From assembly GCA_965644265.1 (NCBI GenBank), contig OZ286469.1:62930001-62994000 (forward strand): a stretch of 64,000 nucleotides of DNA. Reading direction: 5' to 3'. The notes beneath the pieces are model-generated. The model saw nothing but the letters and a program-made list of their open reading frames with translations, ran no database searches and had not been told where the DNA came from. The stretch's first letter is position 1. Each line of letters begins with the position of its first letter. The DNA comes from Glycera tridactyla. Lineage: Eukaryota. Position numbers and translations under genes: made by a program. Below, piece by piece: positions 34,621 to 58,689 of this stretch.

Positions 34621-35190
34621 ATGTCCCTTTTGTATGTTCATAAATATACTGCCTCGAGCGCTGCTGCTACTATATCTACCAAGACTGCTGCGGTCTCTGC
34701 GACTATTTCTACACAGACTGCTACATCGAGCGCCTCTGCTACTACTTCTACCCAGACTGCTGCGTCCTCTACGACTATTTCGACACAGACGTCCGACGTG
34801 AAGGTTCAACCTGTATCAATACAGACTTTTGCAGTGCCATCCCTATCTTCGTCCTTCTCTTCTTCAGGTTCAAAAGTTCTCATCATGGGTAGCTCCCACG
34901 TGGCCCGGATTCCTGCTTCATTGCTAGAGGGAGCAACTAACGTGACTTTGGCTGGGCGAGAGGGCTTCACTTGGTCTGAAGCCTTACAAGTTTTGCAGGG
35001 AAGAAAGGAGCCTTCGCGTGGGGACTTGTCTGCTGCTGCAATCCGAGACTTGATTCTAACAAGTACTGTTAGAGAAACTGTCACCCAGCAAGCAGGACAA
35101 AAACCCATCTCAGGAAATCCAATCAGTTTCCAGCCCAGCACTGGACGATCTGGGATACACTCTATTGAACATAGAGAGCCTAGACACTAG
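34621..35190 (+). pseudogene. SGNH2 partial, U12
   Basis: As U1. Confidence 0.75.
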
Positions 35191-36338
35191 CCTAGAAAAC
35201 ACCATCATGGAGACACCTACAAACACACTCACACAACCACCACACACACCAACATACAGCAGTGTAGTAGCAACAGCAATCATGTCGCCAACCACACAGA
35301 TGCTCCCAAACAAACCGGGCAGCAGACAGCTTAACCCTATCCCCACAGCAGAAGAGTTAGCAGCACATCAGAAACAGAATAGCAGACATCAGATCAAGAT
35401 GCCATCTCCTAGGATCACAACAAAAACTGTGGAGAAAGCCAGCAACCCACCGATCAAGTATCTGTCCAACTATGACAGATACTACGAGCACCTCTACCTT
35501 CCAGAGAGGGCACCTGAAGTAGGGCAGGGAGAAGTCGAGATCGAAGCACTAGACTGCTTCTCTAGGAAGTACGGGCTTATCCCATCATCCTATGTAACCC
35601 AGATGGCGTCAGAAAAACAGCACATTGACAGGTCATCCAACGAACAGCATGTCCAGATCCACTGGGTAGAGGGACACTACATCACCTCACAACTCAAAAA
35701 CAAGAAACTGAAGATCTGGGACTAGACCAACCAAAAACATCATCCAGAGGCTCACCCCACAGATCAAGGCGCTCTATGAGGAGAGCCAATTCGACCTGGT
35801 GCAGCACAGAATAGTGCAGAACCAGAATAACAGCACAGACTGTGGCCCCTTCGCAGCAGCCTTCGCCCAAATCCTGGTCATGACGAAGGCTGACTTGGGA
35901 CAAATCGAGTTCCAGCAGGGCTCAATACGGGAAAAATTCCAGGCCAACCTCAACACCCTGGAGTCTCTGCCCTTCAAAACGAAGAGGAATCCGTTGAAAA
36001 TCAACGACATCCTTGACCAGGCTGCCTCAAATGAAGTCTTTGCCAGGCAGACCATTCTAGAAGAAGCAGCTGGAAAATTCCCTAGTCTAGCAATAGCAGC
36101 GGATTTAGCCAGTAAACACAGCAAGAGGGAGCTGAAAGAAGTGGTCAGCCCCACAAGATCACCACCCACACCACGAAGACAACAACAACCAGACAGGCCC
36201 AAAACACACACCAGCTTCAAAGACAAGCTGACAGCACCCGCCGCAACATCACAGCCAGCCCTGCATACAGTACAGACTATCAGGTCCTGGACAATCATGC
36301 GCTGGTGTGTGCCCCAACACCACAGGATCAGCAGCTAA
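35165..36338 (+). pseudogene. ORF1/Ulp1-like fragment, disrupted, U12
   Basis: CT-deletion stop at 35725. Confidence 0.8.
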
Positions 36339-37907
36339 TGACACAGGATCAGCGGCCTATGACACAGATGGGCACGCCTGCCATGCAGGATTTCAATTGA
36401 CATCAGTTACAAGTAAGCAAGATGATTACATTGCATTGTCAAAAGACAATTTGGCCAACATGAAAGATGTTTTCAGTATGTTACTAACAATTCTCCGCAC
36501 ACTGCAATGATATGGGCATACAAGCTAATTTTTTTTGCATCTCAATCATTGCTGTTGGTGACTTGATGCAGTTATCACCAGTCAATATTCTAATATATGT
36601 GATTTTGAGTAAATTTCACTGAAACTCCAAAAAGAAGATCATGTACAAAACCTCATTCACTGGTCTGCAACATTTGATGTTCTGAATCAATATGGACAAA
36701 TTATACATCAATCGATGCAAAATCTCGTCCTGCATTGATGTTCCAAATTTGGTGAAGATCCGTCAGAGTTGTGGAGGAATTTGACGAGGAATGGATATGA
36801 AGCTAGACGAAATCAGTTCCTGGCTTTAATTTTGACTGCTGAAACAATCATGACCATCAGTTGCTTTCGCTCACGTCCGTGAGCGTGCCTTATATCATGA
36901 AAGAAAAGGCCCACTTGCCACTTGCTCACCGACCTCGGAAGCAGCAACATCTCCTCTCTCCAGCTCTCCAGCAGCCTCAACAACCTCGGACTACTCTCAC
37001 TATCATCCTACTTCAGCTTAGCAGCCTTAGCTATTCACCATCACTCTCACAGCAGCCAAGTGTTTCTACGAAACAGGTAGTGGTGAATTTTACATTTAGA
37101 TTATCATTATTGTTGTTTTTGCCAGGGTTTTTGTCAGGATTAGCTTAGAACATCGTTTGTTTACATCTGTATTTTTGGAAACTTAGCTCTCAACCGCCGG
37201 AATCTATCGTCGTGTCGGAAAACTAGTTTGAATCATAGGATCATCTTGAAAATCGCAAAGCACCTAGCTTCACGGACTATCTATAAGCCCTAGAATTTTC
37301 GAGCGAATAGTACTAGAATTACGGAAACTACGGGACTTTTAGCGACACGGAAATAGCACATCTTGATCTGACTCTCATCTAGCATCATCACTCTCACTTT
37401 CGGCTACGATATCTCCGCGGCATTTATATCCAACTTTCTGGTACATTACATGCTTATTTAGAATCGTTATAGCTTTGTATACATTGATTTTGGATTAGTT
37501 TGGATTGCTAGTTTGGAAATTATCGCGCATAAACCGGGAAAACTTATCACCGCGTCGGAAAATTACTTAAAATCGCTCGATCGCCACGAAAATCGCTCAG
37601 CATCTAGGTATACCGATTATCTATACGCTCTGAAATTATTGAATAGCTAGCTATAAAATTGACGGAATTACGGCATCTTTTGTGACGCGGAATTTGTAAT
37701 TTATTATCGGAAAGCTAAGTAGGTCAACGCGGTGACGGTACCGAGCGACTTTACGCGTCACTGAACACGAGAGCGTGAGTACATCACTGAGCGCGGTCAT
37801 CTCATCAACACCTCTCACTCATCAACACCTCACTTCATCAACACCTCTCCATCAGCATCATCATCTCATCACTCTCATTTCTCTCATCATCACATCACAA
37901 ACTCAAC

Positions 37908-40900
37908 ATGCCCATGTTCCAAAGATTATTGGAGAAATTGTCACCCAGCAAGCAGAGCAGCAAGATGCTTAGCCCATCACAGGAGATTGTGACGATCTCC
38001 AGTTCAGTAGAAGACGACCTTAGCTCTAGTCTCCTGAACATTGAGTCGCTTGACACCAGCTTAGGAAGCGCCACACAATCCACATCAACCACCCCAGCAC
38101 ACACAAACACAAACATGCAGCCACCACACCATACACCACACAAACAAACCTACAGCAATGCTGTCATCACAGGAGTCGAGGTTAGAACTCCACCTACCAA
38201 CATGACAACAACTAAGGGAAACAACAACAATAGGAAACTTAGCGCAGTTCCTACGGAGAGTGAGCTCCTAGAGCATCAGAGGGCTCTGAGTAGAAAGAAG
38301 ACGCCGATGGGATCACCTAGGCTGACTAGAACGAACAGGGAAAAGGCCACGAACCCTCCCATGAAACTGCTGACAAACACGGACAAATATTATGAGAACC
38401 TGCACCTGCCAGAGAGGGCCCCCGAAGTAGGTCAGGGCGAGACCGACATACAGGTCTTGGATTACATCATATGTGATGCAACATGCGAGGGACAACAAGC
38501 CAATGGAGCAGATCAATGGCAAGGGACACGTCCAGATTCACTGGATCGACAATCACTATGTCACCTCCCAACTCAAAGACAAAAAGGTGACCATCTGGGA
38601 CTCCCTTCCGACAGCAGGCCTAATCGACAGGCTCACACCCCAACTCAGGACACTGTACAAACAGGGCTCCTTTCAACTAGTACAGCACAGATTGGTACAG
38701 CACCAGGGAAACAGTATCGACTGTGGGCCCCTCTCTGCTGCCTATGCTCAAACGCTAGTTATGACTACAGCAGATCTGGGCCAATGGGAGTTCAATCAAA
38801 CAGCAGTGAGGGCCACACTCCAGGCAAACCTCAACACCTTAGAGTCGCTGCCGTTCCCAAAGAAGAGGAACACCTACAAGGCCACCGACTTCCTGGAGCA
38901 GAGAGCAGCCGAGACTCTCTACAAAGAGCAGTCGGCTCTCGAGGTGGCTGTAGACACCTTCCCCACCTTAGCCGAGACTGTGGATATCACAAACAGCCAC
39001 AACAAAAGGGTACTCAAACAGGCAGTCACGCCGCCCAAACAACAAAACTCGCCTAACAGCTCACCAGAGAAACAGACCAGCAACACCACATCAATCCACA
39101 GCAACTGCCTCTTCAGTGAAAAGTTAACCTTCACACCCACCCCATCTAAGAAAGGGCAACAAACAGAAACAAGCCTGACCTCTTTAGGCAAGATCAGGAA
39201 GACAAGGAGGGCAGGGTCACCAGAACTGAGAATGACGTGCACTCCTACAGCCGACGACTCAGCCTTCGAGGAGGTTCTGGGCAGGTTAAGGCTCACTCCA
39301 ACACAACGCAGCCAACTGGACATGACAGATCCAGAGCATCAGATTATTACAGTGCCAGACACGGGAGATACATCCACTACACCCATCACGATAGCATCAT
39401 CACCACCAAAAATCGTGGCCATCACCAAGGTCACCACAACACCTGTCACAGTAGACGCACCAGAATCACCCGGTCGGTCAGATATAGAAACTAACTCGAA
39501 CACCTTGGACACTCAGAATGATCAGATTACCACAGTAGAAGAATTAGCAAAAGAGAAAACTGAGGAGATTGGACAGGAGACAGTAGCAGAAAAAGAGGGT
39601 CATACCGAGACAGAAAGAGAAGAGATAGACTTAGAAACAACAAACAAGGAAGTGAGGGTTGAAGACACAGTGATAACATCAGATGACACTGACAGAGAAG
39701 CAAGAGGTGAGGCAGTCTCTGACGAGAACTCAATAGCGTCGGCTGAACACGGAGACAGTTCAGTCGACCGAGACACACCCAACACACCCAGACCTATACC
39801 CGCACCTCGCAACATTAACACAAACACCAAACCCAAAGAACCCACACCAACACAACAACATGCACCCAACACCACCAACAAAACAACAACCACACCGACA
39901 CTTACAGAAAAACCTGCCACACCTGCACGCAACACCACACATGAGATAAAATACCCTGCATACGCTACACTAAAAAGCACATTGTGGGGTAGCCATATGG
40001 AGATGGCGACAGCAATAGAGAAGAGATTAGAAGGAGAAATTGAGATTCTTCCTAATAGGGACTCGGGATCTACATCAGTCTTACTTAGGCCACTTACGGC
40101 GGAAGCCAATAGATTCTTAAGCCGCCATGACAGCAAAATAGACGACAAAACCCTCTCGTTGAGGGTAAGATACAATAAAAACCTAGAAAGTTGCTTCGTC
40201 CTATATAGAGTCCCTCTATCATACCAAGAGAGGAGTTTCCTAAAAGACCGTCGGATTTTACGCGTAGAGCAGCTGTCGTTAGATTTAGATAATGAAAGAG
40301 CTGCCTACAAAATAGTAGGAGTTTCACCAAAACCAGATGTATACCACCTGCCTCCATGCGGTGACAACATCAATCTGAAATTTCCAACACATGAGTTTGT
40401 AGAGAGATTAGAGAGATGCATGCGTTGCCAGGGATATGAACATACCATTGGCAACTGCACAAATAGACTAGCGTGTGAATTTTGCGCGGGCTCGCACTGG
40501 AAAAAGTCGTGCCCAGAAAGACAGGCGGCGAAACCTAAATTTAGATGTGTTAATTGTGGCAAAGCCCACAAGGCAAGTTCCATCCATTGTTACATGGCCA
40601 GGGACTTCAACAACAAGGTTAGGGAACAGCAAAGAGAGCAAGAGAAAATAGAGAGTATGAACAACATGAACTTTATACAGGCAGCGAAAGAAGTAGCAGG
40701 TGAGATGGGCTTTGAAGTCCCTAAAACACCTATTAGAATGACACCATGGGAAGTAGAAATGAAGAGGCAACGGGACAAACATGGGGTCACCATAAACACC
40801 GACAACACAGGCACAACAACACCACCACCACCATCAACGCCCACAGAGCAACAAACATCACCCACCGACACTCACACACAAGACACTACAAACCCGAAAC

Positions 40901-41991
40901 TCACATACAACCCCGCCAACAAGACAGCACAAACCACCACCAACACACAACCTACAAACACGCCGACAACCACAAACGAACAAACACGGCACACACCCGC
41001 AACAAACAACAAACCAGACACCAATCCACCCACTCACAAACACGTAGGACAACAAACAAGAGTCACAATGCAGACGCACCCTTATATCGGTGTGAAGGAG
41101 ACTAAGTGGGAAACTTTCTGTAGGGTTCACAGAGAGAATGTGAAAACACATCAAGATAAAGTCTGGAAAGAATTTCTAGCAAACAAACTTATAGAAGAAA
41201 ATAAGAAGAAAGAACGGAAACATAGAAGAGACAATAGACAGCCAGTTTCACTGTATATAGGGAGACAGAAACAAGGACAATTACAGACAAACAAACGACA
41301 ACAACAACAGCAACGGCACAAACAACACAACCAGCAACAACAGCAGCAACGACAACCACAACAGAACCAACACACGCGCCGAACACACAACACTCACCCA
41401 CAACAATACCAACATCAACAACAACGCAAACAACACACACCTGCCTACAACAACCACCTACAACGCCGCAACAACAACACACAACACAAACAAACCAAAC
41501 CTCTCCCCTTCATCGAAATCTTCCGCTACCCACTACCCAAACCCAAACCAACCTACACTCTCCCCAACGCCAAATCCTCCTCCTCTCCACAACACCACAA
41601 CACCCCCACACCGTTCTCCCGCCGACGAACAAATCCACCCCCACCCCCCACCCACAAACGCTCCTTCACCAATCCACCCGACCCCCACCGCCGCAAACAC
41701 TCGAAATCTCCCAACAATTCTTCTCCCTCACGCCACAACCATCCCTTCTCCCCTCGAAAACCAAACCTTCCAAAACCTAACCCAACACACCAACACAGCA
41801 ACACTCACACACCCAACACTACATGCCACCACAACACGCCACAGACGTACATACAACAGCCTAATTACCAATATATGAATTGTAGACCAGCGATGATGAT
41901 GCCTCAACCACAATATATGATGATGCCTCAATTTCAGAGCATGCCTATGACTCAGGGAATGATCCCACAGCAGCCGATGGCATACTATTAA
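37908..41991 (+). CDS. LINE copy A ORF1 (~1360 codons, one frameshift): Ulp1-like protease + low-complexity linker + 3 zinc knuckles + Q/H/P-rich tail
   Basis: Split into 37908.. and 38473-41991 by a ~29-nt deletion near 38465 relative to copy B. Knuckles CMRCQGYEHTIGNC, CEFCAGSHWKKSC, CVNCGKAHKASSIHC; protease HY/WDS/QHQGNSIDCG. Confidence 0.88.
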
Positions 41992-44900
41992 AATTCACGG
42001 AAGAACAGAAAAAGAAAAGTAGGAACCTCAATATACTGCAGTGGAATGCAAAGAGCCTGAAACACAAACTAGCCGCGCTAGAAGAGACAGTTAGGGCACA
42101 GAACATAGACGTCATTCTACTGCAAGAAACAGGGAAAGGGAATTTTCTGCCAAAACTCCCTGGTTTCACTAGTTATAGATCAGATTCATTTGAAGACAGG
42201 GGCACAGTCATCATGGTAAAAGACTCGTTGCCCTCAGAAAAGATTAGTAACGTAGACCAGAATGACAGGTCAGTTGTATCAGTCAGAGTATGGTATGGTA
42301 GAGATACGTTAGTCTTTCACAATATTTATAGTAACCCTAAGTATAAAGAATTAGAACTCTTAGATCTGATGAAAACTGACGAAAATTCCTTTATAGGCGG
42401 AGATTTCAACGCAGTTAGCAAGGTCTGGTCAGATAGAGAAGACCAGAAAGGGAACCATATTTTAGCACAAATTGAAAACTCAGGGACCCACACATGCATC
42501 AACGACGGGGATCCGACCAGACCAAACGGTAGGGCGGTCGATGTCACTCATCTCAAATAGGTTAGCCCCCCTTTGCAGCTGGCACAGAGATAAATACCTA
42601 TGTAGTGATCACCACGCTATACATACAAGAATATGTAAGGAATTTGAGAGAATAGAGATCGCCCACATTCCGAGAAGAAGGATCAAACAAGCAAATTGGA
42701 AAGAGTACGATAGAAAAATTACTGAATTACTAGCTAGCTACATTCCTAGTGAAGATCTTGAAGTTCACGCTCAAGAGATCATAGATATAATTAATAAGGC
42801 CGCAGACAAGACGATCCCACTTAGCAAGAAACCAGTCGATAGGGTAGCACCCTGGCTCAACCACCCAAAAGTCAGAGAGGCGAAAAGACTAATTAATCAT
42901 TTTTTAGGCATTAAAAAGAAACCAACATGCTCTGAGGATCTCAAGAAAGAGCTTAGAAAAGAAATCACGATAGCAAGATCCTACTACGCTAGAAAGTGCC
43001 AAGTGGCCAAAAGGGAATACTTCCAAGAATTCTTAGATCAGATTGACCTGCATACTTCAGACTCCAAAGTCTGGAATACGCTGAAGAGCATGGCAGGTGC
43101 CTACAAGAAAACGAAAATAGTAGACGATCCCAAAAAAGAAGCTGATAGGATCATTAAAAATTTTGCAGATCGCTGCAACATCTCACCAGCCAGCCAGGAA
43201 CAACAGATAGAACTAGAAATTCTCAATCAAGAAAGAATGATTGAAATAGAAAGAGCTGAAGAGACTAGCTCGGACCTAGATAGACCTTTCACAATGAGAG
43301 AATTTAGAACAGCTATACTCACAAATAGAAGAGACACTGCAGCTGGAGCTGACAACATTACTTACTCCATGATCAATCATTGCAGCTCCATAGCACATGA
43401 ACATTTCCTCGAACTCCTGAACAAATCTTTTTTAAGTAGCAAACTACCTTCGGTTTGGATGGAAACAATCACCTGCGCCATACCGAAGAAAGAATTAGGC
43501 TCCTTTAGACCCATCACTCTACTGACAGTAATGGACAAATTACTTCAGAGAATGATTCTAGCACGACTTAGATACAAACTTCCAGAACCGCACAAGCACC
43601 TGTATGGATACACAAAAGGAAGATGTACCACAGATGCCTTAGCTCTAGTAATAGCGAGAATCTCAGAGAGATTACATAAGAAAAATGTTAGCAAGACTAC
43701 ACCGATAGGGATCTTCCTGGACGTACTTAGGGCATTTGAAACATGCGATTCAACTACGATATGCTATAGATTAGTACAGAAAGGAGTACAGGGAATCACC
43801 CTTAGATGGCTGAAAGCCTTTATGGGGCCTAGGAAAAGCAAGGTTAGATTTCAAGGAGTATACTCTGACCTCTTACCCTTCCTGAAGGGCGTACCTCAGG
43901 GATCCATTCTTAGTCCATTTCTATTTAACACACTAATGGAACATATAATAGAACAGGACTACCCGACAGGAGTCGAAGTCCTATCATATGCTGATGACTT
44001 AGCGATCATCTCTACAGGGCGAGAGGCCAGAAACAGAGCACAAACAGCCTTAAACAGAGTGGCAGCAGTATGCGCCGAGAACAGCCTTACACTTTCAAAG
44101 GAGAAGTCCAAGGCTATACACTTTAAAAACCCTAATAGCACGAAGACAGTTAGGGAACTTACACTACATGGAGAAGAGCTCGATTGGGTAAAAGAGCACA
44201 TGTACCTAGGGGTGATCCTAGACAGAGGGCTGAATCTAGGATCACACACCAAATACATCAAAAATAGAGCATCGCGTAGACTAAACATTCTCAGATGCAT
44301 TGCCGGTGCCACATGGTCCGACACTAGAACACTTAAAACCTATTATATAACATGCATTAGAAGCCTTTTGGAATACGCTGCACCAGCCTTAGCTTTAGTC
44401 AAAGGGAAAATGGGAGCTGCCTTTGAATCCACTCAAAACCACGCTATTAAATGTATATTAGGTTTACCTCAACACACGCCCACAGAAGCAGCTCAGTGCG
44501 ATAGCGGACTACCAGCCATGCGGCTTAGGTACCAACCGCTCACCCTTAACTACCTAGCCAAAAGGCTACACAGGGAAGACAGCCCAATCAGAGACCTCAT
44601 TTTGGGATCACAGTACAGGGATTTAGAGCTGTTTAAAACTTATAGCTGGACAGCACATGCTGCGGCTTTTGTCAAAAAACACTTAGGGATAGAAACAGCT
44701 GAATCGATAGATTTATATGAGCAGAACATGCCAGAGAAGGCCCCATGGGAAGACAGCTCAATACACACACACGCATTACCCCTGGAGAGGGGGAAAAACA
44801 CATACACTACACCAGACCTACTAGACAGAGCAAACACATACATCACTAAGATTAAGGAACAAGGGGACTACGATAGAATTTTCTACACAGATGGCTCACT

Positions 44901-45768
44901 GGATCCAACTTCAGGCAGAGCAGCCTCTGCAGTTTATGAATTGGAATCCGATTATTGTTACTCCTGTAGAATATCAGACAACGCCTCCACACTCCAAACA
45001 GAATTGTTAGCCATTCTCCTTGCACTAGAACAGGCAGGACTAGAACCGGAACTAACAAATAGAATTATCATCTTTACAGATTCGCTCTCAGCAGTTAAAG
45101 TGTTAGATAACATGAGAACCGAGAGACAGAATATAGAACTAGTACGAAAAATCAGAGAGATAGCAGACACCTGTAGAAAGGTAGAAATACACTGGATTCC
45201 CAGTCACGTAGGAGTCCTAGGCAACGAGAAAGCCGACGAATTAGCGAAGTTAGGACTGGAACATGAAACAGTCAATAGGAACTTTTCTAGAACATCCAAC
45301 CAAATAGCATGTCAGATGACGAAATCGGCAACGGAAAAAATGTATGAAACAGCCTTGGAAAATAGCAAGAAGGACAGACATCTAGCCTGGTTGAAGAGAA
45401 TTAGCAACCTCAAACCTTGGAAGGATAGGCCAACCATGCTCAAAAGAACAGCTAGCCAAATTAACATGCTCAGATTAGGAATTTCACATTACGACTACAA
45501 TGGATTCACTAGAACACTGGCAAAGTGTCGACACTGTGAAGTAGAGGATGACAGCCCAACACACTATCTAGCAGAATGCACAGCATTAGATCAACTCAGG
45601 TTAGAACTACTAAACATTTGTGATCCGCAGGGCAGATTGAGCGCAGAAGAAGTCGCTATAGAAATCTTACGATATACCCAAGTGGAAACAAAACTACTTG
45701 AAAAAATGCTCAAACTAGCACCATATCAGCACAGGAAAGAGAAAGAAAGCATTCAGCCATCTGATTAG
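41886..45768 (+). CDS. LINE copy A ORF2: AP endonuclease, reverse transcriptase, RNase H, C-terminal CCHC (one frameshift)
   Basis: ILQWN (42033), LLQET, GGDFNA, SDHHAI; GVPQGSILSPFLFN, YADD; YTDGS..QTEL..FTDS..HWIPSH..GNEKAD; CRHC..HYLAEC. 2-nt deletion near 42547 relative to copy B. Confidence 0.93.
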
Positions 45769-45910
45769 TTAGTGACTACTGTGTGTGGACCGGACGGGTC
45801 TGCTTCTTTTTTCACTTGAAAAACTGAAACTGAGTAGACCCGCCCGAGTTACTACAAGTTGGTCAACATTAATATGTTGAGCAATTCAGTCTCTGACAAT
45901 CAGATGAGGA

Positions 45911-45949
45911 CACACACACACACACATACACACACACACTACACACACA
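45911..45949 (+). repeat. (CA)n tract, probable 3' tail of LINE copy A
   Basis: Imperfect (CA)n ~140 nt after the ORF2 stop. Confidence 0.7.
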
Positions 45950-46224
45950 GTGACTTGTTGAATAATTGCACGGCCAGAAACTACCAACAAATTCATTTAC
46001 TGCGCACCCGCCACTCAATATATAGACTGCGGTGCAGCGGTAAATGTGGTAAAACGGTAGTGCGGCGGACTACCACCAGGTGCCTCATCACCGCACACCG
46101 CCTACATAAGCGCGGCAAACAGGCGGTAGTATGGGAACAATGTAGTTGCGGCAACTACCACCAGGTGCCGCGTTACCACATAGAGTACCCTGGCACACCA
46201 ATCCAATCATCAAGAATCACGGGT

Positions 46225-46280
46225 ACACACACGCACACACACACACACACACGCACACACACGCACACACACACACACAC
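46225..46280 (+). repeat. (CA)n/(CGCA) microsatellite
   Basis: Directly visible. Confidence 0.9.
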
Positions 46281-46389
46281 AAAAAACCCACTACACACAG
46301 AAACACATAACCAGAACACGATGCTTCATTAGATAATATATTTTACATAGAGACATAAATACAACAGATATACAGACAGATATAGAAAT

Positions 46390-47391
46390 TTACCAATCTC
46401 CAGGGGAAAAAGCTCTCACCTCTCTCTTAATTGAGTACAACAATTCGGGATACAAGTATTGGTGCAGATGCTTATTGTCTTTGGTACCCTTAGCTGTCGT
46501 TTTCCGAATGTGTGCGTCCGGATGGAACCAGGTAGGCACTACCAAGGATGTCACACTTGGATGGGCGGCTACTCCTTCATTTACGTGCCAAGCCGCCCTC
46601 ATCCGCTCCTGGTCCCAATCCGGACGCGTTAAAACACTCAGAACATGAATTCTGGGCACAGGCAGCCCAGATTTCACTCGCAAGTACTCAACATACGACA
46701 AAAAAGAGTTCATATCATGAACAACCTCACTCGAAGTGGCAAAACGGCTCTTGCCACTCTCAATGTCGAAAACCCGACGAGCAAGATCATTCGAACCGTA
46801 TACAAACATGCAGACGTTGCATCTTAGAATCAGGTCACGAATGGAGGCAGATGAAATGTTTCCACAGGAAGGCTCTTTCTTTCCTTGCAGAACTTGCAAG
46901 GCCTCAGACCAAGTAAATCCTTCCCGCCCGGCCAAAGTTACATTAGTAGCTCCATCCAACGCTGAGAGGGGTATGCGAGCTACATGCGAACTTCCCATGA
47001 TGAGCACCTGGGTACGAGGGATGCACGAAACAGACGAAGCAGAGGAAGATGTAGTAGACAGAACGGGCAACGCGGCAGTTTGCGTAGAGATGACCCTGGT
47101 GCTCACTTCGGATGTCTGTGTAGAAATAGTTGTTGAGAAATCTGTCGACGGAGGGGAGATCGCAGCAGCTGATATAGGTGTAGCTATAGGTGCAGAAGAA
47201 GTTGTAACAGCAGACGAAGTCGTGACACCGGCTGTAGCAACTCGTAACTTCATTAACTCGGAGGTAGCAGCAGCCTGTTCGAAAATAGCAGCTTTCCGAG
47301 CCTTCAAATTTTGCCTTTGTCGCCTCTTCCGCAAGGCAAGCTTGCTGGGCATTCCACTAGGAGCAGGATGAAGAGCAGCTGTTGACTCCAT
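46390..47391 (-). CDS. Free-standing SGNH hydrolase paralogue (333 aa from ATG), basic + Ser/Thr/Ala-rich N-terminus
   Basis: IMGSSH, AGREG, YGSND, DNKH intact; clearly homologous to the array SGNH1/SGNH2 and ends PGDW like SGNH1. Confidence 0.88.
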   Translation of the reverse strand: MESTAALHPAPSGMPSKLALRKRRQRQNLKARKAAIFEQAAATSELMKLRVATAGVTTSSAVTTSSAPIATPISAAAISPPSTDFSTTISTQTSEVSTRVISTQTAALPVLSTTSSSASSVSCIPRTQVLIMGSSHVARIPLSALDGATNVTLAGREGFTWSEALQVLQGKKEPSCGNISSASIRDLILRCNVCMFVYGSNDLARRVFDIESGKSRFATSSEVVHDMNSFLSYVEYLRVKSGLPVPRIHVLSVLTRPDWDQERMRAAWHVNEGVAAHPSVTSLVVPTWFHPDAHIRKTTAKGTKDNKHLHQYLYPELLYSIKREVRAFSPGDW

Positions 47392-47540
47392 AATGGACGA
47401 TTCAGACGTAGCAGAGTTGTACACAAAGTAGTAGTAGTATTAGACACTGGAAGTTGGAAGTCTTCACAGGGTATGACTGAATCAGGGAAAAACAACCAGT
47501 TTTATGCCCACTAGCTAGCGCCCATTGGCTGGAGCCGCTC

Positions 47541-47830
47541 AGGTGTTAAACTGGGTGAGCAGCCACTCATAGCTGAGCCAGAGCCACCAACTAGCCGGCA
47601 AACTGACACCTCACGCCTAGACTAAGCGAGCACTCACCTATCCTAACACCTTGAGTTCAGCGAGTATTCTCAAGGTGCTAACAGAACTACTTACGATTGG
47701 TCACATAACACCTCAGGGTGAGGTAAATTGAGCAAGCACTCGCTTATTCTAACACCTCGAGCGAGAAGAATAATCTCGAGGTGTTATTAGCATCCTCTTT
47801 GAAACCGTTATATAACACCTCAGAGTGAGG
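47541..47830. repeat. Cluster of TAACACCT/AGGTGTTA motifs arranged as duplicated (~106-bp period) hairpin pairs
   Basis: Octamer at 47541(-), 47644, 47706, 47750, 47779(-), 47813; 12-bp stems 47644-47680 and 47750-47786 with 13-nt loops; ACCTCA-N3-TGAGGT near 47710 and 47817. Confidence 0.85.
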
Positions 47831-50653
47831 TAAACTGACGATACTCGACATAACCGGAAAACGGAATAATACATTTTAGAAAGAAATCACACATATCACA
47901 CTACATACACCTCATATACCACCCCCCTAGCACCACCTCAAAAGATCGTTTTTTGCATTTTCCGGCCGATGCATGTGACGGACATGGAATGGAGTCCCAT
48001 ATAGCCCACAAGGGAGGACTGTATGAATGGACTGTTTTTCGTGGACAGTTACCGCAAATTGGTCAAAAACACACTTTTTGAGCAATTCGGCTGCCGAGAA
48101 GTGAACTCGATCTCACGCGCAACATTATGCAATACGCACACAACATACACATAAAACACACACAATCGCCCACACACATCACCACATAACAATCTCAGTC
48201 GATACGATGACTGCTAATGACGAATTTGGGCGATTCTCAGACACCTCACAGGTGTAGGAAAAATGCCCACTCTCTGTTATGGCAAGCTGATTGACATCAT
48301 ATGTCAAGCAGTTCAGTCGGGTCACACAGAGATACACACACACACATCTGGAATGGTGAAAAATTAGGGCCCATGAAACACCGATCTGATTATAGAGAAC
48401 ATGTAGAGATCTGGGAAAAGGGGTTGCACCTACACACTCGCATACGCAAAAAACAACAAAGATCGCACACACACAACAACCACACACCTGCACACAAACA
48501 CACACAGCCTACACGCGCGCGCACTCACACATCCACAATATAAAAAACATCCACACAGTATGAAAGATGAATAAATGAAAGAATGAAAGGGAAAATGCGT
48601 GATCGATTGTATCTAGAAGAATAGGAATCGGTGGCAAAACATGGTAAGCGGCAGTTCCATAAACTACCGCTAGAGGGGGCACTGCGACGGAAAGCAATTT
48701 CCAGTCAAGTGCCCACTTATCCTCTAAAACCATCGTCATCGAGGTCGTTCCGAAGGATGTGAAAGATCGAAAGTGAAAAGTGCTGAAAGGGTAGGCTGAC
48801 GAAGGCATGCTGGGGACGTCTCCGGACACCGACATATGACACCTGCACATACCCAAAGTCTAAGAGTTTGAACCAAGGAGAGTCAGGAAAGTCATATGAA
48901 AATGGTGCCCGGTTGCTGTTCCGGCACATCAAGTCTGAAATTTCAGAGTTGACTGGCCCAAAATCAGCCTGAGGAATGAGGTAGTGGATGATGCATAAGT
49001 GTGAGATTGTATAACTGATAGAGCAAAAGAGGTGAAGAGGAAGACACAATGCGCCATCTTACTCACTCTTGAATTATTCAGACCTATGAATCTCAAAATA
49101 GGCAGGGCAAAGAAGCGCAGAGTCCCTTCCTCTACCAGTCATATATGTGTGCGTGCGTGATAATCGCTATGCAGCTGGGCAGAGAACACTGTCCCGCTGG
49201 GTGGCAATTATCACTAGGTTTCCCTTTCAGCGATGGTCTTCCCCTATCACTTCAGAACACAAAATTCGGGAGATGGGAGAATAACTTTCAACCATCTACC
49301 CTCGAGGGGATACCCTCTGGGCTCCTTTCAGAACACCAAATTGGGTATAAGCGGGCATCCAAGCGTAGCGATTTTGCCCCTACAACTGAATACGGAATAG
49401 GTTGTAGTGGGTGGGTAAGAGTGAAGGGCTGCGTTAACTTTCGAGGACGGGTTGGGGCTCTCAGCTTTGGGAGCAATCAAAATTGGCGATCCGTTGGTTC
49501 CTTTTGTAGCCTTCGTGCCGGAGTTGCTGAGTCCGACATGGTGATGAACGACGGATCTTCCTCTTCTTTCTATCGCACTTAAAGCTAAAGGCAGACTTAG
49601 TGCATCTGCCAAGGGGCCCTTAGGGGCCCTCGGGTACTTTCCCGAAACCTTCAACACACCCACTTGCCAACACTTGCGCACCGACCTCGGAAGCAGCAAC
49701 ATCTCCTCTCTCCAGCTCTCCAGCAGCCTCAACAACCTCGGACTACTCTCACTATCATCCTACTTCAGCTTAGCAGCCTTAGCTATTCACCATCACTCTC
49801 ACAGCAGCCAAGTGTTTCTACGAAACAGGTAGTGGTGAATTTTACATTTAGATTATTATTATTGTTGTTTTTGCCAGGGTTTTTGTCAGGATTAGCTCAG
49901 AACATCGTTGTTTACATCTGTATTTTCGGAAACTTAGCTCTCAACCGCCGGAATCTATCGTCGTGTCGAAAAACTAGTTTGAATCATAGGATCATTCCAA
50001 AAATTGCATAGCACATAGCTAGACGGACTATCTAAAAGCTCTAGAATTTTTGAGCGAAAAGCACTAGAATTGCCGAAACTACGGGACTTTTAGCGACACG
50101 GAAATAGCTCATCTTGATTAGACCCGTATTTAGCGTTCATCACTCTCACTTTCGGCTACGATATCTCCGCGGCATTTATATCCAACTCTCTGGTACATTA
50201 CATGCCTATTTAGAATCGTTATAGCTTTGTATACATCGATTTTGGATTAGTTGGGATTGCTAGTTTGGGAATTATCGCGCATAAACCGGAAAAACCTATC
50301 ACCGCGTCGGAAAATTACTTAAAATCGCTTGATCGCCACGAAAATCGCTGAGCATCTAGGTATACCAATTATCTATACGCTCTAGAATTATCAAATAGCT
50401 AGCTATAAAATTGACGGAATTACGGCATCTTTTGTGACGCGGAATTTGTAACTTATTGTCGGAAAGCTAAGTAGGTCAACGCGGTGACGGTACCGAGCGA
50501 CTTTACGCGTCACTGAACACGAGAGCGTGAGTACATCACTGAGCGCGGTCATCTCAACACCTCTCACTCATCAACACCTTCAAATCATCAACACCTCTCC
50601 ATCAGCAGTATCTCATCAACCTCATTCTTTCCATCATCATATCATCACCAAAC

Positions 50654-53600
50654 ATGTTCAACAGAATCATGGCTAAATTATCACCGAACAAATCACGCAA
50701 CAGCCCAACACAAGAAATTGTGACTGTCTCTAGTTCGGTGGAGGATGATCTGAGCCAAACTCTGCTTAACATCGAGAGTCTGGACACCAGTCTAGGCAGC
50801 ACCTTAGGGGACACCATAAACACCCCGAGGACTTACATCCAGACTCCTCAGACTCCACAGACACCTGCACACTCTTACAGTGCTGCAGTAGCTAGCACTA
50901 CCAACACACTCATGACACCACCGACACACAAACCATCTAGAAGCTCCAGACCAAGACAGCTTGGCAACGTACCTTCAGCACAAGACATAGCCGATCACCA
51001 TGCAAGCACTCGGACAAGCAAAGTGCGAATGTCACCGATAGTGACTAGAACTAAACTGAACACTGCTAACAATCCTCCAAAGAAACTGATAGCAAATCAT
51101 GCTATCTACTACAACAACCTGTACCTACCTGAGAGAACACCTGAAGTAGATCAAGGGGAAGTAGACATCTCGGTATTAGACAGATTCTCACTGAAGTACG
51201 GCATGGTTCCTCCCTCATACGTTCTGCAGCACGCTCGTGAAGATCTTACCATCGCTCAGATTAGCGGAAGATCGCATGTACAAATACACTGGGTGGACGG
51301 GCACTTCGTGACCTCACAACTGAAGGACAGGAAGGTGACCATCTGGGACTCGAGGCCTTCCCAGAATATGATCAAGCGGCTGAAACCGCAACTGAAAACT
51401 ATCTACAGGGAGGGTACCTTCAAACTAGTCCAGCATCGGCTAGTACAGGATCAGGGCAACAGCACAGACTGTGGTCCCTACGCAGCTGCATGTGCCCAAA
51501 CACTAATCATGTCAAAGGCAGATTCAGGACAGCTAGAGTTCGACCGACACACCGTCAGAGATATTTTCCAGGCAAACCTAGTCACTCTTGAATCCATTCC
51601 CTTCAAAACGAAGAGGAACCCACAAAAAACAGAGGATATCCTCGAAGACATGGCAGCGGAGGAACTCTTCGCACAAGCATCAGAACTAGAGGAAGCAGCG
51701 GATTCCTACCCCACGTTAGAGCAAACAGCTAGTCTTGCGACGTCACACAAGAAGAAAGACGTCAAAGAGGCCACCAGCCCAGCCACAAAACACACACACA
51801 CACACCTGCCCACACTACACAACAACAACAACAAACACACTGCAAGCAACCGCACACCACCCACGTTCAAAGACAAACTAGTTGTCTCTACCAACACAAC
51901 ACCAGTGAAAAAGACAGCTGCAGATTCCAGCAAACATACCTCTCTGGGGAAAACATCTACTAAGACTAGAAGGTCCAGCCCCAATAGCACACCGACTCCC
52001 AACGATGAGGTGTATGAGGAGCTCCTTGGGAACCTCAGACTAACACCAACACAAGTTAGCCAGGTGGAAATGGCGGACTCAGACTACCAGTTTCCTCTCA
52101 AGGAAGCAGATATAGAGCGACCAACTGCAATCACAGAAGAAACTGTGACAAAAGAAGACACCAGGGCCACTAGTACTACGGCGGTGCCAGTTTCGAATGA
52201 CCTCGATGCCCTGACTCTCAGTACGCCACCTGCCTTAGAGAAACCGACTGAAACAGGAAAACCTGATGAAAACTACTCGACAGCATCGATAGACCAGAGG
52301 GGAGACACGGATCAATTAGATAGCATGGTAAAGACAACTGAGTTTAGGGCGGACCCGATCCCATCAGATGACAGGGCATCTTCGGCTGTACATGGGGATA
52401 GCAGCTCAGTAGCACCAGATGACACGACAGAGTCGGCTGAACACGAGGAAAGTTCAGTCGGCCCTGTGGCTACACTAACCGGAAGCAAGGTAGCACCAGT
52501 TACACTCAACACACACACACCCAGGCCCACACCAGCACCTCGTCGCAAAAAACCCACAACAAACAAACCCGGCGAAACCACACCAACACAACAACACACA
52601 CCCACGAAAACGCCAGACACACACACAGACACGACCTCCCTTGCAACATGGCAACACGACAACATAACACAAAAATACCCAACATACGTTACGATGAGGA
52701 CAACTGAGTGGGAGAGCCATATGGAAATGGCCACAGTTATAGAGAAACATTTAGAGGGGGAAATCGAAATAGTTCCAGGCAGGGATTCGGGATCGACAGC
52801 GGTCATCCTCAGACCAATTACCGCCGAAGCTAACAGGTTTTTAGCAAATGCTAAAAACAAAATCAACAACAAACACTTAGCGTTGAGAATTAGAAACAAC
52901 AGAAACTTGGAGAGTACCTTCGTCATTTATAGAGTACCAAACACATATGATAACAAGAACTTCTTTTTAGATAGGAGAATTATGACAGCCGAACGAATAG
53001 CGGTTGACACAGAAAAAGGTTGGGGCACCTACAAAATTACAGGGGCTCTACACAGACCAGATATTTACAGACTTCCATCACACGAAGGGCACGAAAATCT
53101 CTTCTTTCCTACACATGAGTACATAGCCAGATTAGAAAGATGCCTTAGATGTCAAGGCTTCGAACACACGACAAGCAGTTGCAAGAATGTACTAGCTTGC
53201 GAGTACTGCGCGCAGAAACACAGGAGCAAAGATTGCCCGCAAAAAACAGCAGCTAGACCAAAATACAAATGTGCGAACTGTCTAAGAGAACACAGAGCCA
53301 GTTCCATACACTGTGCATTCAACATTGATCATAACAGAAAAGTCATAGCGCACAACAAAGAATTAGAGACGATCAGAAGCTTCGAGAACATGAATTATAT
53401 GATGGCCACAAAAAACGTAGCCAGGGAACTTGGTTATGAGGTACCAAAAACACCTGTTAGGATGTCGCCCTGGGAAACAGAAATGGCCAGACAGAGGGAA
53501 AACTACGGGAGAATATTAGAAAAAACAGGCACAATCGACAACACCTCTAACAAACAAACAATCCACACGAACACGCCAACACAACACTCCACAAACACAC

Positions 53601-54692
53601 AACCCGCAGACATGCTCACCAACACGCCAACACAAACCACTACAAACACACAACCTACGAACACGCAGCAGAACACAAACAAACAAACACCTCAACCACC
53701 CACTGCAAACAACGAAACAGACACCAACCTACCCACTCACAAACACGTTGGACAACAGACACGAGTCACCAGGCAGACTCACCCATATATAGGTATAAAG
53801 GAGACCACATGGGAAACCTTTTGTAGGGTCCACAGGGAGAATAAGAAGATGCATCAAGATAAAGTCTGGAAGGAATTTCTAGCAAACAAACTCATAGAGG
53901 AAAACAAAAAGAAAGAACGGAAACATAGAAGAGACAATAGACAGCCAGTGTCACTGTATATAGGGAGGCAGAAACAAGGACAACCACAGACAAACAAACG
54001 ACAACAACAACAACAACAGCAACGGCACAAACAAAACAACCAGCAACAACGACAGCAACGACAAGCACAACAGAACCAACACACGCGCCGAACATACAAC
54101 ACTCACCCACAACAACACCAACATCAACACCAATGCAAACAACACACACCTGCCTACAACAACCACCTACAACGCCGCAACAACAACACACAACACAAAC
54201 TAACCAAACCTCTCCCCTTCATCGAAATCTTCCGCTACCCACTACCCAAACCCAAACCGACCAACCCCTCCCTCAACGCTAAATTCGCCTCCTTTCCACA
54301 ACACCACCACACCGTTCTCCCGCCGCCGAACAAATCCACCCCCACCCCCCACCCACAAACGCTCCTTCACCAACCTACCCGCCCCCCACCGCCGCAAACA
54401 CCCGAAATCTCCCAACAATCCCTCTCCCTTACGCCACAACCGTCCCTTCTCCCCACGAAAACCAAACCTTCCAAAACCCAACCCAACACACCAACACAAC
54501 AACATCCACACACCCAACAATACATGCCACTACAACACGCCACAGACGTACATACAACAGCCTAACTATCAATATATGAATTGTAGACCAGCTATGACGA
54601 TGCCTCAACCACAATATATGATGATGCCTCAATTTCAGAGCATGCCCATGATTCAGGGAATGAATTCACAGCAGCCAATGGCATACTGTTAA
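50654..54692 (+). CDS. LINE copy B ORF1 (Ulp1-like protease, zinc knuckles); frameshift near the 3' end
   Basis: 1303-aa ORF 50654-54565; 8-nt deletion near 54308 relative to copy A; homologous stop (MAYC*) at 54692. His 51302, Asp 51347, Cys 51470. Confidence 0.9.
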
Positions 54693-57448: not shown

Positions 57449-58299
57449 TTTGTTTGTATAAAGTTTTATTTGAAAAACATCGACCAAAATGGTCACATAA
57501 CATGTCACAAAAACTGAAGAAAATATGACAATAGAAACAGATGGCATAGCTAGATGACAGTCATCGAAAGATAGACTAGAGACATGTACCCTCCACTAGT
57601 ATTGAGGATGAATACTTTAGACATACAGGCTATGATTAAAATTACAAGCATTATGCAGACTTACAGGCAGACCTAAGTATAAATATCAGTCCCTCGTACA
57701 CTTAGTTGAGAAGTGTAGGTCCTGATAGTATCAGCAAATGATAACGATTGTAAGATAGTAAGTCATAATGAGAGTTGTAAGCCACGATCCGAAATGGTAA
57801 ACGATAGAGAACAAATTTAGGGGTGTGAAATCGTCATCCTAGCGGTTGAAGTCGGAATTAATCGCGGATATAGCGCCTCCGGCGGTCACTTTGTAAACTA
57901 TACGAAACAAGATGGCGAAGATGCGTTTAGATGACATTTGTCGACGAATAAAGAATCATCTCAGCGAGAAAACATGGCAAGTACGGGTATTTTCGTCGTG
58001 CGAATCGCGTAAACGCTTATACGAGAAGTGATCGCGACTATTTGTCGCAGCCCGCTGGGTTTATTTATATCCTAATAACCGGTTTTTCGCGAAGAACCTC
58101 GAATATCGCTCACAACATTGCAGGGCTTCCCCCGGAATTCAGTGTTTGTTTACCCAAGCTACGTTGTTTGTTCAATAAAGCCAGGTAGACAGAAGGGCAG
58201 TACTAGACACCATTATGTTATATTGATGCAGTAATAGCATTGTTTGCACATCAAAAACCAGGCAGGTAGAAATGCAATAATAAGCACATTGATACTGAG

Positions 58300-58452
58300 A
58301 TACATACACACACTCACAACACACTCCCACACACACAAACAAACACTCATCCGCACACAAGCATGCACTCAGTCATTCACTCATACTCATACACACACAC
58401 GCACACACATACACAGACACACCTACACACACACACACACACACATACACGC
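58300..58452 (+). repeat. (CA)n-rich tract in the 3' region of the CR1/L2-type insert
   Basis: Directly visible. Confidence 0.9.
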
Positions 58453-58689
58453 ACAAAAGTCACTTGGACTGGTGACAATCCGATGTTTGCCCCCAGCCAT
58501 AAATTGTCTAATGTAGCACTGCCCAACTGTCAACCCTGTTCACTCGATCCTCAACAGATACACCAATACACTGTAGTGATCTTTCATGAGTCTTCAAACT
58601 AGGGCTCATATTAATAGTTTCAAAAACATTGGGCATAATTACATGCAGTGATATAAGGAATTTGTTCTTAGGATATTTACATAGACAAC

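What the first reader, a model, noticed from the sequence alone, without database searches (positions are those of the whole stretch)
37860..41150. ORF1 module swapping: the two LINE copies share ends but have deeply diverged ORF1 bodies
Seen: the 5'UTR (36910-37860 versus 49659-50605) and everything from the ORF1 tail through ORF2 are nearly identical by eye, with few amino-acid changes in ORF2. From the start codon to ~41000/53750 the proteins differ at very many positions and synonymous sites are also scrambled. The array holds a third ORF1 type. Inference: recombination or template switching exchanges a protease + knuckle cassette among old lineages, possibly to escape host restriction.
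Basis: partly seen in the sequence, partly recalled or inferred. Interest (0 to 1): 0.7.

Follow-up and report, generated by a model that had tools for sequence, protein, structure and literature searches.

The report
Mosaic LINE family with swapped modules
Two adjacent copies of a 12.7-kb retrotransposon share near-identical ends but carry anciently diverged first genes, because this low-copy family repeatedly shuffles at least five modules among co-existing lineages; this is a clean new example of a process already known from mouse L1.

Summary
Copies A (36910-49658) and B (49659-57445 plus 63114-64000 and beyond) are 93-94% identical in the 5'UTR and 94-97% from the ORF1 tail through ORF2. 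Between about 37872 and 41003 they are only 50-65% identical.

Synonymous sites are saturated in the ORF1 body (pS 0.74-0.82) against dS 0.16 in ORF2, with dN/dS about 0.1 in both.

About 20 further genomic copies show a family-wide mosaic. One 5'UTR type is joined to five or more ORF1-N (Ulp1-like protease) types, three or four ORF1-C (three CCHC knuckles) types, two tail types, two ORF2 lineages and variable 3' regions. All four combinations of N-a/N-c with C-a/C-c exist, and AU tests reject shared trees.

Several mosaics have 8-11-bp target-site duplications on different chromosomes, and four have both ORFs open. The protease and knuckle parts swap separately, not as one cassette. The 3-kb array carries ORF1-N type c.

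"Escape from host restriction" is untested. The exchange mechanism (RT template switching versus DNA recombination in head-to-tail chains) is unresolved. This is a known kind of event (mouse L1; Jockey-superfamily ORF1) seen in an unusual three-gene LINE.

The parts
36910..49658 (+). LINE copy A, full length (12.7 kb), a three-parent mosaic of types N-a / C-a / tail-alpha / ORF2-alpha
   Evidence: The extent is set by homology to copies L017, L005 and L002, which carry target-site duplications and whose homology stops at 49657/49658.
36910..37907 (+). 5'UTR of A, of the single type shared (86-99%) by almost all lineages
   Evidence: The 5'UTR tree cuts across the ORF2 lineages; AU p = 1.3e-9.
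37908..39735 (+). ORF1-N module of A (N-terminus, Ulp1/C48-like protease, start of the linker), type a, frameshifted by a ~30-bp deletion at 38466
   Evidence: It is 99-100% identical to L018, 96% to L004 and 94% to L007/L008, but 52-66% to B, L001 and L002. Peptidase_C48 scores 24 bits against a gathering score of 20.7, and all 6 types match. His, Asp, Gln and Cys are invariant.
39736..41149 (+). ORF1-C module of A (structured domain plus three CCHC knuckles), type a
   Evidence: It is 92-96% identical to L004, L002 and L035 and 86-91% to L009, but about 60% to B and L001. Cys and His residues are invariant in three knuckles.
41150..41991 (+). ORF1 tail of A (low-complexity, with a conserved C-terminus), type alpha
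   Evidence: It is 96-97% identical to L017 and 92% to B. The break against L017 lies at 41149 (41119-41154).
42200..45768 (+). ORF2 of A (APE, RT, RNase H), lineage alpha; the open frame listed runs only from 42472
   Evidence: Pfam finds RVT_1 and RNase_H. It is 98% identical to L017, 95% to B and 70-76% to the beta lineage.
45769..49658 (+). 3' region of A; it ends ...CTTCAACACA with no poly(A), and only the last ~500 bp are common to all copies
46390..47391 (-). Antisense ORF3 (333 aa, SGNH-like by motifs only) inside A's 3' region
   Evidence: It is intact and 95-96% identical in L017 and L002. A second type (62% aa) lies in L007, L035 and the array. A homologue sits in the same place in a relative from another assembly (35%, E = 2e-31). 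Pfam gives no hit.
49659..57445 (+). LINE copy B, first part: 5'UTR 49659-50653, ORF1 50654-54565 (types N-b / C-b / tail-alpha), ORF2 from 54912 (alpha)
   Evidence: The same mosaic occurs in L005 (97.7%, with a target-site duplication, on another chromosome) and in L017 (93%).
57446..63113 (-). Unrelated nested LINE (APE + RT, 972-aa ORF at 58690-61608) that splits B's ORF2
63114..64000 (+). Copy B resumed (3' part of ORF2); B runs on beyond the window for about 4 kb and is followed directly by another copy
35060..36260 (+). ORF1-N module of type c inside the last unit of the 3-kb tandem array; the same piece is in all 12 units
   Evidence: It is 94% identical to L009 in DNA and 89-91% to codons 5-408 of L001's ORF1 in protein, with one frameshift near 35721.

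Best explanation
A and B belong to a low-copy family (about 20-25 copies) of 10-12.7-kb non-LTR retrotransposons. The family has three genes: ORF1 (Ulp1-like protease plus three CCHC knuckles), ORF2 (APE-RT-RNase H) and an antisense ORF3. Several lineages have co-existed long enough for synonymous sites to saturate, and they repeatedly exchange segments by recombination. At least five modules are exchanged: the 5'UTR, ORF1-N, ORF1-C, the ORF1 tail with or without ORF2, and the 3' region. Borders fall at the start codon, in the disordered ORF1 linker, at the knuckle/tail junction, at the ORF1/ORF2 junction and at the end of ORF2. The recombinants stay coding-competent and retrotranspose. This produces pairs such as A/B, whose ends are young and shared while their ORF1 bodies are ancient and different. 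Shown here: mosaicism, incongruent histories, purifying selection on all modules, and transposition of the mosaics. Inferred: the exchange step itself. I favour (about 50%) the reverse transcriptase switching between two RNA templates during target-primed reverse transcription. DNA-level recombination between master copies lying in head-to-tail chains is the main alternative (about 35%).
For: There is a step in synonymous divergence. For A vs B, pS is 0.74-0.82 in the ORF1 body, dS is 0.16 in ORF2 and K is 0.059 in the 5'UTR. For L001 vs L002, ORF2 dS is 0.17 while the ORF1 protease and knuckle parts are saturated. For L004 vs L002, the N-part has dS about 2 and the C-part 0.15. Painting 19 copies gives these types in the order N, C, tail, ORF2: A = a,a,alpha,alpha; L004 = a,a,alpha,beta; L007/L008/L018/L011 = a,c,beta,beta; L001/L036 = c,c,beta,beta; L009 = c,a,alpha,alpha; L002/L003/L035 = d,a,alpha,beta; B/L005/L017 = b,b,alpha,alpha; L010/L034 = e,d,alpha,alpha. 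All four combinations of N-a/N-c with C-a/C-c are therefore present. AU tests reject imposing one module's clades on another: p = 3e-6 to 3e-4 for the ORF1 parts, 1e-46 to 1e-170 for ORF2, and 1.3e-9 for the 5'UTR. Change points are sharp and fall in four zones at several distinct positions: 37867-37952, 39476-39735, 41003-41149 and 41953-41999. That implies several independent events. The mosaics were mobilised. Target-site duplications of 8-11 bp flank L017, L005, L002, L008 and L001 on different contigs, and five of the eight mosaic types occur at two or more loci. Both ORFs are open in L001, L002/L003, L004 and L017, which represent four different mosaics. Differences within shared modules have dN/dS 0.05-0.3, so they arose in selected, active lineages. 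In an independent low-coverage run, contigs leave A's sequence at 37955 (continuing into the N-c type) and at 41998, the same borders. Head-to-tail junctions carry extra 5'-end fragments, which fits a template-jumping enzyme; this last point is inference.
Against: No direct evidence bears on the exchange mechanism. The family is small and half of its copies sit in one 0.75-Mb region of contig C29 as head-to-tail chains, which also favours DNA-level unequal exchange or gene conversion. Copy A's exact mosaic is a singleton, and so are L004's and L009's. A's 2.2-kb tract that is 99-100% identical to L018 could be a recent gene conversion. I could not check the assembly of A against raw long reads. 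The genome search scores only the best candidates, so the census is a lower bound. For the ORF1 tail, the topology test was uninformative (p = 0.185), so that border rests on change points only.
Confidence: 0.8

Rival explanations
1. The mosaics arise at the DNA level. Unequal crossing-over or gene conversion between resident, still-competent copies lying head-to-tail in chains creates new master copies, which then retrotranspose.
For: About half of the copies lie in chains within C29:62.66-63.41 Mb. Copy number is low, so two competent partners can plausibly meet; this removes the usual objection raised for L1 (PMC3600994). A and L018 share a 2.2-kb tract at 99-100% identity inside otherwise unlike elements.
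Against: The mid-ORF1 borders lie in the least conserved stretch of the alignment (mean identity 0.45-0.61), which is poor substrate for homologous recombination. The mosaic partners sit on different chromosomes. Nothing distinguishes this from RNA-level switching.
Confidence: 0.35
2. There is no exchange. ORF1 simply evolves much faster than the rest (an arms race), while the 5'UTR and ORF2 are conserved.
For: ORF1 has long disordered, low-complexity stretches that evolve fast (dN/dS up to 0.6 in the linker).
Against: Synonymous sites are saturated in the ORF1 body, yet dN/dS is only about 0.13. Each ORF1 type has near-identical partners (93-100%) in copies whose ORF2 is only 70-76% identical. 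The four-combination pattern and the AU tests also speak against it.
Confidence: 0.02
3. The mosaics are assembly chimeras, formed by collapse or mis-joining among similar repeats.
For: A, L004 and L009 are singleton mosaics. I could not lay raw reads of the source sample, because only one low-coverage run of contigs was available.
Against: Five mosaic types recur at independent loci, with their own flanks and target-site duplications. ORFs remain open across the borders in four mosaics. Independent contigs show the same borders.
Confidence: 0.03
4. The deep ORF1 and ORF2 types did not diverge inside this host lineage. They entered by horizontal transfer from other species and then recombined with resident elements.
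For: Module lineages are as far apart as separate TE families (ORF2 alpha vs beta: dN 0.20, dS saturated). Horizontal ORF1 transfer has been proposed for the Jockey superfamily (PMC4120745).
Against: The nearest outside relative found is much further away than the types are from each other: ORF2 47% and ORF1 domains 34-36% amino-acid identity, against 48-61% for ORF1 and a non-synonymous divergence of only dN 0.20 for ORF2 between the types. No donor was found.
Confidence: 0.1

Closest known systems
Mosaic L1 families of the mouse (Sookdeo et al. 2013, PMC3600994)
   Same: Different segments of the element give different trees. 5'UTRs are repeatedly replaced across lineages, ORF1 domains (the coiled coil) are transferred between families, and there is a breakpoint at the ORF2/3'UTR junction. 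The same three candidate mechanisms are discussed there.
   Different: This is a different LINE group (RNase H present, CCHC ORF1, no poly(A)) with tens of copies rather than tens of thousands. The exchanged modules are far more diverged (synonymous sites saturated), and whole enzymatic or RNA-binding domains are swapped. Here one 5'UTR has spread over all lineages, whereas in mouse different promoters allow families to co-exist.
Reticulate, modular ORF1 evolution in the Jockey superfamily (Metcalfe & Casane 2014, PMC4120745)
   Same: ORF2 is tree-like and constrained, ORF1 is modular and reticulate, and domain shuffling and transfer of whole ORF1s between lineages are inferred.
   Different: That inference is made across phyla from domain-type distributions in consensus sequences. 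Here the exchange is seen between homologous ORF1 modules within one genome, with mapped breakpoints and copies carrying target-site duplications. ORF2 is exchanged too.
Esterase (SGNH/GDSL) genes of retroelements: ORF1 of CR1/L2/RTEX LINEs (PMC3905857) and ORF3 of bdelloid LTR elements (PMC5408684)
   Same: An accessory hydrolase-like gene is carried by a retroelement, and such accessory genes are shared among retroelement lineages in a modular way.
   Different: Here the candidate gene is a separate antisense ORF in the 3' region of a LINE. It has SGNH-like motifs only and no Pfam hit. It concerns the neighbouring finding rather than the ORF1 swap.
End-to-end template jumping of non-LTR reverse transcriptases, e.g. 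R2 (my own knowledge, not checked in a paper here)
   Same: Head-to-tail junctions with a few extra nucleotides copied from the 5' end are what a jumping reverse transcriptase would leave.
   Different: Internal switches between homologous templates have not been shown for this family. The junction evidence is only suggestive.

Membership tests
Non-LTR retrotransposon (LINE) of the RNase H-bearing, CCHC-ORF1 kind (I-like group) | ORF2 with an apurinic-type endonuclease and a reverse transcriptase | tested here: met
   Pfam finds Exo_endo_phos_2 (1.7e-12) and RVT_1 (about 1e-31) in A and B.
Non-LTR retrotransposon (LINE) of the RNase H-bearing, CCHC-ORF1 kind (I-like group) | RNase H domain after the reverse transcriptase | tested here: met
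   Pfam RNase_H, 8.9e-14, in A's ORF2.
Non-LTR retrotransposon (LINE) of the RNase H-bearing, CCHC-ORF1 kind (I-like group) | ORF1 with CCHC zinc knuckles | tested here: met
   Three Cys-Cys-His-Cys units are invariant in six ORF1s, including one from another species. No Pfam zf-CCHC hit was obtained, and the PDB profile gave only weak LIN-28/eIF3G knuckle matches (E = 0.2-0.7).
Non-LTR retrotransposon (LINE) of the RNase H-bearing, CCHC-ORF1 kind (I-like group) | Insertion by target-primed reverse transcription: variable target-site duplications, 5' truncation, no LTRs | tested here: met
   Target-site duplications of 8-11 bp flank five copies. L018 and a copy near L001 are 5'-truncated.
Non-LTR retrotransposon (LINE) of the RNase H-bearing, CCHC-ORF1 kind (I-like group) | Placement of the RT inside a named clade (I, Nimb, Ingi, LOA, Tad1, R1...) | not tested
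   No named reference sequences were available by reference. The best outside hits are unnamed (47% and 42%) or arthropod 'uncharacterized' proteins at about 31%.
Peptidase C48 (Ulp1/SENP, CE clan) domain in ORF1-N | Profile match at Pfam's gathering score | tested here: met
   PF02902 scores 24 bits against a gathering score of 20.7 on the excised domain. All 6 types match at E <= 0.01. The whole ORF1 gives no hit.
Peptidase C48 (Ulp1/SENP, CE clan) domain in ORF1-N | Catalytic His, Asp, Gln (oxyanion) and Cys in order | tested here: met
   Invariant H63/H68, D83, Q116/Q118 and C124 in alignment A2 across five in-genome types and the outside relative.
Peptidase C48 (Ulp1/SENP, CE clan) domain in ORF1-N | CE-clan fold | tested here: inconclusive
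   The AF2 models are poor (pLDDT 40 and 48). Foldseek's top hits are almost all SENP, Ulp1, Den1, ChlaDub, SseL or XopD, but with E >= 0.005 and TM 0.2-0.3.
Recombinant (mosaic) LINE family in the sense of mouse L1 | Different segments give significantly different trees | tested here: met
   AU tests give p from 3e-4 down to 1e-170. The tail segment alone was uninformative (p = 0.185).
Recombinant (mosaic) LINE family in the sense of mouse L1 | Sharp breakpoints between stretches of high and low identity | tested here: met
   Change points have delta-lnL of 44-198 and intervals of a few to tens of bases.
Recombinant (mosaic) LINE family in the sense of mouse L1 | Recombinants propagated by retrotransposition | tested here: met
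   The same mosaics occur at separate loci with target-site duplications. ORFs are open in four mosaics. dN/dS is about 0.1 within shared modules.

The most novel reading that the evidence does not exclude
This family behaves as a freely recombining ('sexual') population of LINE lineages. Five or more functionally interchangeable modules, including a protease domain, an RNA-binding/knuckle domain, the whole ORF2 and an antisense ORF3, are reassorted often enough that no element-wide phylogeny exists. One promoter-bearing 5'UTR has recently swept across all lineages. The head-to-tail chains would be both the product and the nursery of a template-jumping reverse transcriptase. With only ~25 copies and several still open, it would be a tractable natural system for measuring ORF1/ORF2 compatibility and template switching in a LINE.
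Probability: 0.35. Interest if true: 0.65.

Novelty: new member of a known kind. Interest (0 to 1): 0.5.

Why it matters
Recombination between LINE lineages is known mainly from mammalian L1, where huge copy numbers and modest divergence blur the picture. Exchange of whole ORF1s has otherwise only been inferred across phyla.

Here a small family shows deep, still-selected module lineages, mapped borders at domain limits, and several coding-competent recombinants in one genome. Together these show that ORF1 domains, ORF2 and the promoter of a LINE can be functionally mixed across family-level divergence.

The result also warns that classifying such elements by RT alone, or by ORF1 alone, will mislead. 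It further re-reads neighbouring features of this window: the 'stand-alone' SGNH-like gene and the 3-kb array are parts or debris of the same element family.

Tried and rejected
- Pfam on whole ORF1s gave nothing. Only the excised protease domain scores.
- Single-sequence AF2 (pLDDT 40) and AF2 with a 6-row alignment (pLDDT 48) were too poor for a trustworthy fold. Foldseek hits point to CE-clan proteases but are not significant.
- A PDB profile search found no protease relative.
- The search for sequencing runs returned one small run of contigs (share 0.06). Laying it gave only short pieces, so A's own borders could not be verified and nothing can be said about expression.
- The AU test on the ORF1 tail was uninformative, because the tested split can be satisfied by re-rooting. 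I rely on change points there.
- My first ORF2 codon comparison was out of frame and was redone from the nucleotide alignment.
- I considered that L001 and L002, which share the same flank and the same target-site duplication, were one duplicated insertion later converted in ORF1. I rejected this because their ORF2 differences are strongly non-neutral (dS 0.166, dN/dS 0.09). Independent insertions at a preferred site fit better.
- A literature search for a Ulp1 protease in LINE ORF1 found nothing relevant.
- The RT clade and the host organism were not identified.
A's broken ORF1 was analysed as two separate frames.


Full report
WHAT IS IN THE WINDOW

The window is G000:C29:62930001-62994000 of a 2.04-Gb genome. 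The host organism was not identified. The window holds three things: a tandem array of roughly 3.0-kb units (1-36909), then two copies of one non-LTR retrotransposon, head to tail on the + strand.

The extent of each element follows from copies elsewhere in the genome. Homology of the dispersed copies L017 (contig C18), L005 (C51) and L002 (C30) to the window runs from 36919 to 49657/49658 and then stops. Those copies are flanked by target-site duplications (TSDs) of 11, 8 and 11 bp.

- Copy A is therefore 36910-49658, or 12.7 kb.
  - It has a 5'UTR, ORF1 (37908-41991), ORF2 (to 45768; APE, RT and RNase H by Pfam) and a 3.9-kb 3' region.
  - It ends in CTTCAACACA without poly(A).
- Copy B starts at the very next base, 49659.
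  - It is interrupted at 57446-63113 by an unrelated LINE on the minus strand.
  - It resumes at 63114 and runs out of the window. Another copy follows it directly.

A and B are 93.4% identical over the 5'UTR, 93-97% from about 41000 to the end of ORF2, and 40-69% in between. Across that middle part the two ORF1 proteins stay collinear at about 50% identity.

Maximum-likelihood change points lie at 37872 (37854-37880) and 41003 (40925-41149), each with delta-lnL above 100.

It fails.
- In the ORF1 body pS is 0.74-0.82 (saturated) with dN 0.45, so dN/dS is about 0.13.
- In ORF2 dS is 0.163 and dN 0.016.
- In the 5'UTR K is 0.059.

Neither copy is intact.
- A's ORF1 has a roughly 30-bp deletion at 38466 that shifts the frame.
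- The listed open frame of A's ORF2 starts late.
- B's ORF1 is open, but its last ~90 codons have left the family's frame.
- B's ORF2 is split by the nested LINE.

THE WHOLE FAMILY IS A MOSAIC

A search of the genome with the 5'UTR and with both ORF1 bodies found only about 20-25 copies. Half of them lie in C29:62.66-63.41 Mb. I fetched 23 loci and aligned 19 of them. Painting the alignment in 300-bp windows, clustered at 88% identity, gives the following.

- One 5'UTR type in nearly all copies.
- ORF1-N types:
  - a: A, L004, L007, L008, L011, L018
  - b: B, L005, L017
  - c: L001, L009, L036
  - d: L002, L035
  - e: L010, L034
- ORF1-C types:
  - a: A, L002, L004, L009, L035
  - b: B, L005, L017, with L010 and L034 nearby
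  - c: L001, L007, L008, L011, L018, L036, L037
- Two tail types, alpha and beta.
- Two ORF2 lineages:
  - alpha: A, B, L005, L009, L010, L017, L034
  - beta: the rest

Between types, identity is 52-66% in ORF1 and 70-76% in ORF2.

All four combinations of N-a/N-c with C-a/C-c exist: A and L004; L007, L008 and L018; L009; L001 and L036. Tail-alpha occurs with ORF2-alpha and with ORF2-beta (L002, L004, L035).

Copy A itself has three parents.
- It is 99-100% like L018 up to 39630.
- It is 94-96% like L004 up to about 41149.
- It is 96-98% like L017 from there to its 3' end.

AU tests reject forcing one module's groups onto another.
- p = 3e-6 and 3e-5 for ORF1-N.
- p = 3e-4 and 2e-5 for ORF1-C.
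- p = 1e-170 and 2e-46 for ORF2.
- p = 1.3e-9 for the 5'UTR.
- The tail test was uninformative (p = 0.185), so that border rests on change points at 41953-41999.

Breakpoints fall in four zones, at several distinct positions within each, which implies several independent events: 37867-37952, 39476-39735, 41003-41149 and 41953-41999. A fifth border lies at the end of ORF2. For example, L002 is 72% like A at 44637-45452 and 97% like it from 45713.

The mid-ORF1 zone is the least conserved part of the alignment. That suggests borders are tolerated in the disordered linker rather than guided by homology.

THE MOSAICS ARE REAL, MOBILE AND SELECTED

- TSDs flank L017, L005, L002, L008 and L001.
- Five mosaic types occur at two or more loci on different contigs.
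- Both ORFs are open in L001, L002/L003, L004 and L017, which are four different mosaics.
- Differences within shared modules are strongly non-neutral: ORF2 of L001, L002 and L004 has dS 0.16-0.21 and dN/dS 0.09-0.11; B vs L017 ORF1 has dN/dS 0.05-0.26. They therefore arose in replicating lineages, not in dead copies.
- In an independent, low-coverage public run, contigs follow A's 5'UTR and leave it at 37955 for N-c-type sequence. Another contig leaves at 41998.

WHAT THE MODULES ENCODE

- The N-part holds a Ulp1/C48-like protease.
  - PF02902 scores above its gathering score on the excised domain.
  - All six sequences tested match: five from this genome (A and L004 share type N-a) and one from a relative in another assembly.
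  - His, Asp, Gln and Cys are invariant.
  - Structure prediction was too weak to add more than a hint.
- The C-part holds a conserved domain followed by three invariant CCHC knuckles.

The array's 'third ORF1 type' is N-c. Every unit carries codons 5-408 of it, at 94% DNA identity to L009.

MECHANISM

What is shown is recombination among long-separated, replication-competent lineages, followed by retrotransposition of the products. How the exchange happens is inferred.

I favour template switching by the reverse transcriptase between two RNAs during target-primed reverse transcription. Three observations point that way.
- The partners were active lineages.
- The products are dispersed with TSDs.
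- The head-to-tail junctions (A|B, B|next copy, L004|L035) carry extra fragments of the 5' end, as a jumping enzyme would leave.

The family is small and clustered in chains, however. DNA-level unequal exchange or conversion between master copies is therefore a serious alternative, and the usual argument against it in L1 does not apply here (PMC3600994).

'Escape from host restriction' remains speculation. All modules show purifying selection.

COMPARISON WITH WHAT IS KNOWN

- Mouse L1 shows the same phenomena: 5'UTR replacement, transfer of an ORF1 domain, and a breakpoint at the ORF2/3'UTR junction (PMC3600994).
- ORF1 of the Jockey superfamily was shown to be modular and reticulate while ORF2 is tree-like (PMC4120745).

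This case is a new member of that kind. It differs in several ways: it is another LINE group, the exchanged modules are far more diverged, ORF2 is exchanged too, a single 5'UTR has spread over all lineages, and the copy number is very low.

I found no paper describing a Ulp1-like protease in a LINE ORF1 in the library searched. That point belongs to a neighbouring finding.

The nearest outside relative comes from another assembly, with ORF2 at 47% identity. It has the same layout of three genes.

LIMITS

- The census is a lower bound.
- A's own mosaic is a singleton and could not be checked against raw reads.
- The RT clade and the host were not determined.

Noticed in passing
window 46390-47391 (-), inside 45769-49658: The 'stand-alone' SGNH-like gene is not stand-alone. 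It is an antisense ORF3 (333 aa) inside the 3' region of LINE copy A. It is intact and 95-96% identical in L017 and L002, which carry target-site duplications. It exists as a second type (62% aa) in L007, L035 and the array. A homologue (35%, E = 2e-31) occupies the same position in a relative from another assembly (L042). It has SGNH-like motifs only; Pfam gives no hit.
   Followed up: partly
window 49658/49659; L022/L006 junction (C29:62998024-32); L004/L035 junction: Elements lie head to tail with no target DNA between them. Each junction carries a few extra bases that repeat the element's own 5' end. About a dozen copies form two oppositely oriented chains in C29:62.97-63.13 Mb.
   Followed up: partly
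L001 with L039 (C29:62646200-62664135); L002/L003 (contig C30): L001, a strongly 5'-truncated copy 5 kb downstream, and L002/L003 all sit at the same position of a repeated ~2.5-kb flank related to the array unit. All have the same 11-bp target-site duplication apart from one base. The ORF2 differences between L001 and L002 are non-neutral (dN/dS 0.09), so these look like independent insertions at a preferred site.
   Followed up: partly
window 1-36909, unit e.g. 33400-36909: The 3-kb array unit is assembled from pieces of this LINE family in mixed orientation. One piece is the ORF3 type-2 sequence (33840-34601, 97% aa to L007's antisense ORF). Another is the ORF1-N type-c piece (35060-36260). 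This agrees with an earlier follow-up that called the array a LINE-derived macrosatellite.
   Followed up: partly
window 57446-63113 (-): A different LINE (972-aa ORF at 58690-61608 with APE and RT, no RNase H hit) is nested in B's ORF2. Its target-site duplication and family were not examined.
   Followed up: no
L009 (C32:49699145-49709144), about 950-1110 from its 5' end: Copy L009 carries an extra ~155-bp piece of N-c-type ORF1 sequence (93.5% to window 35568-35722) between its 5'UTR and its start codon. This is a small internal duplication at a module border.
   Followed up: no
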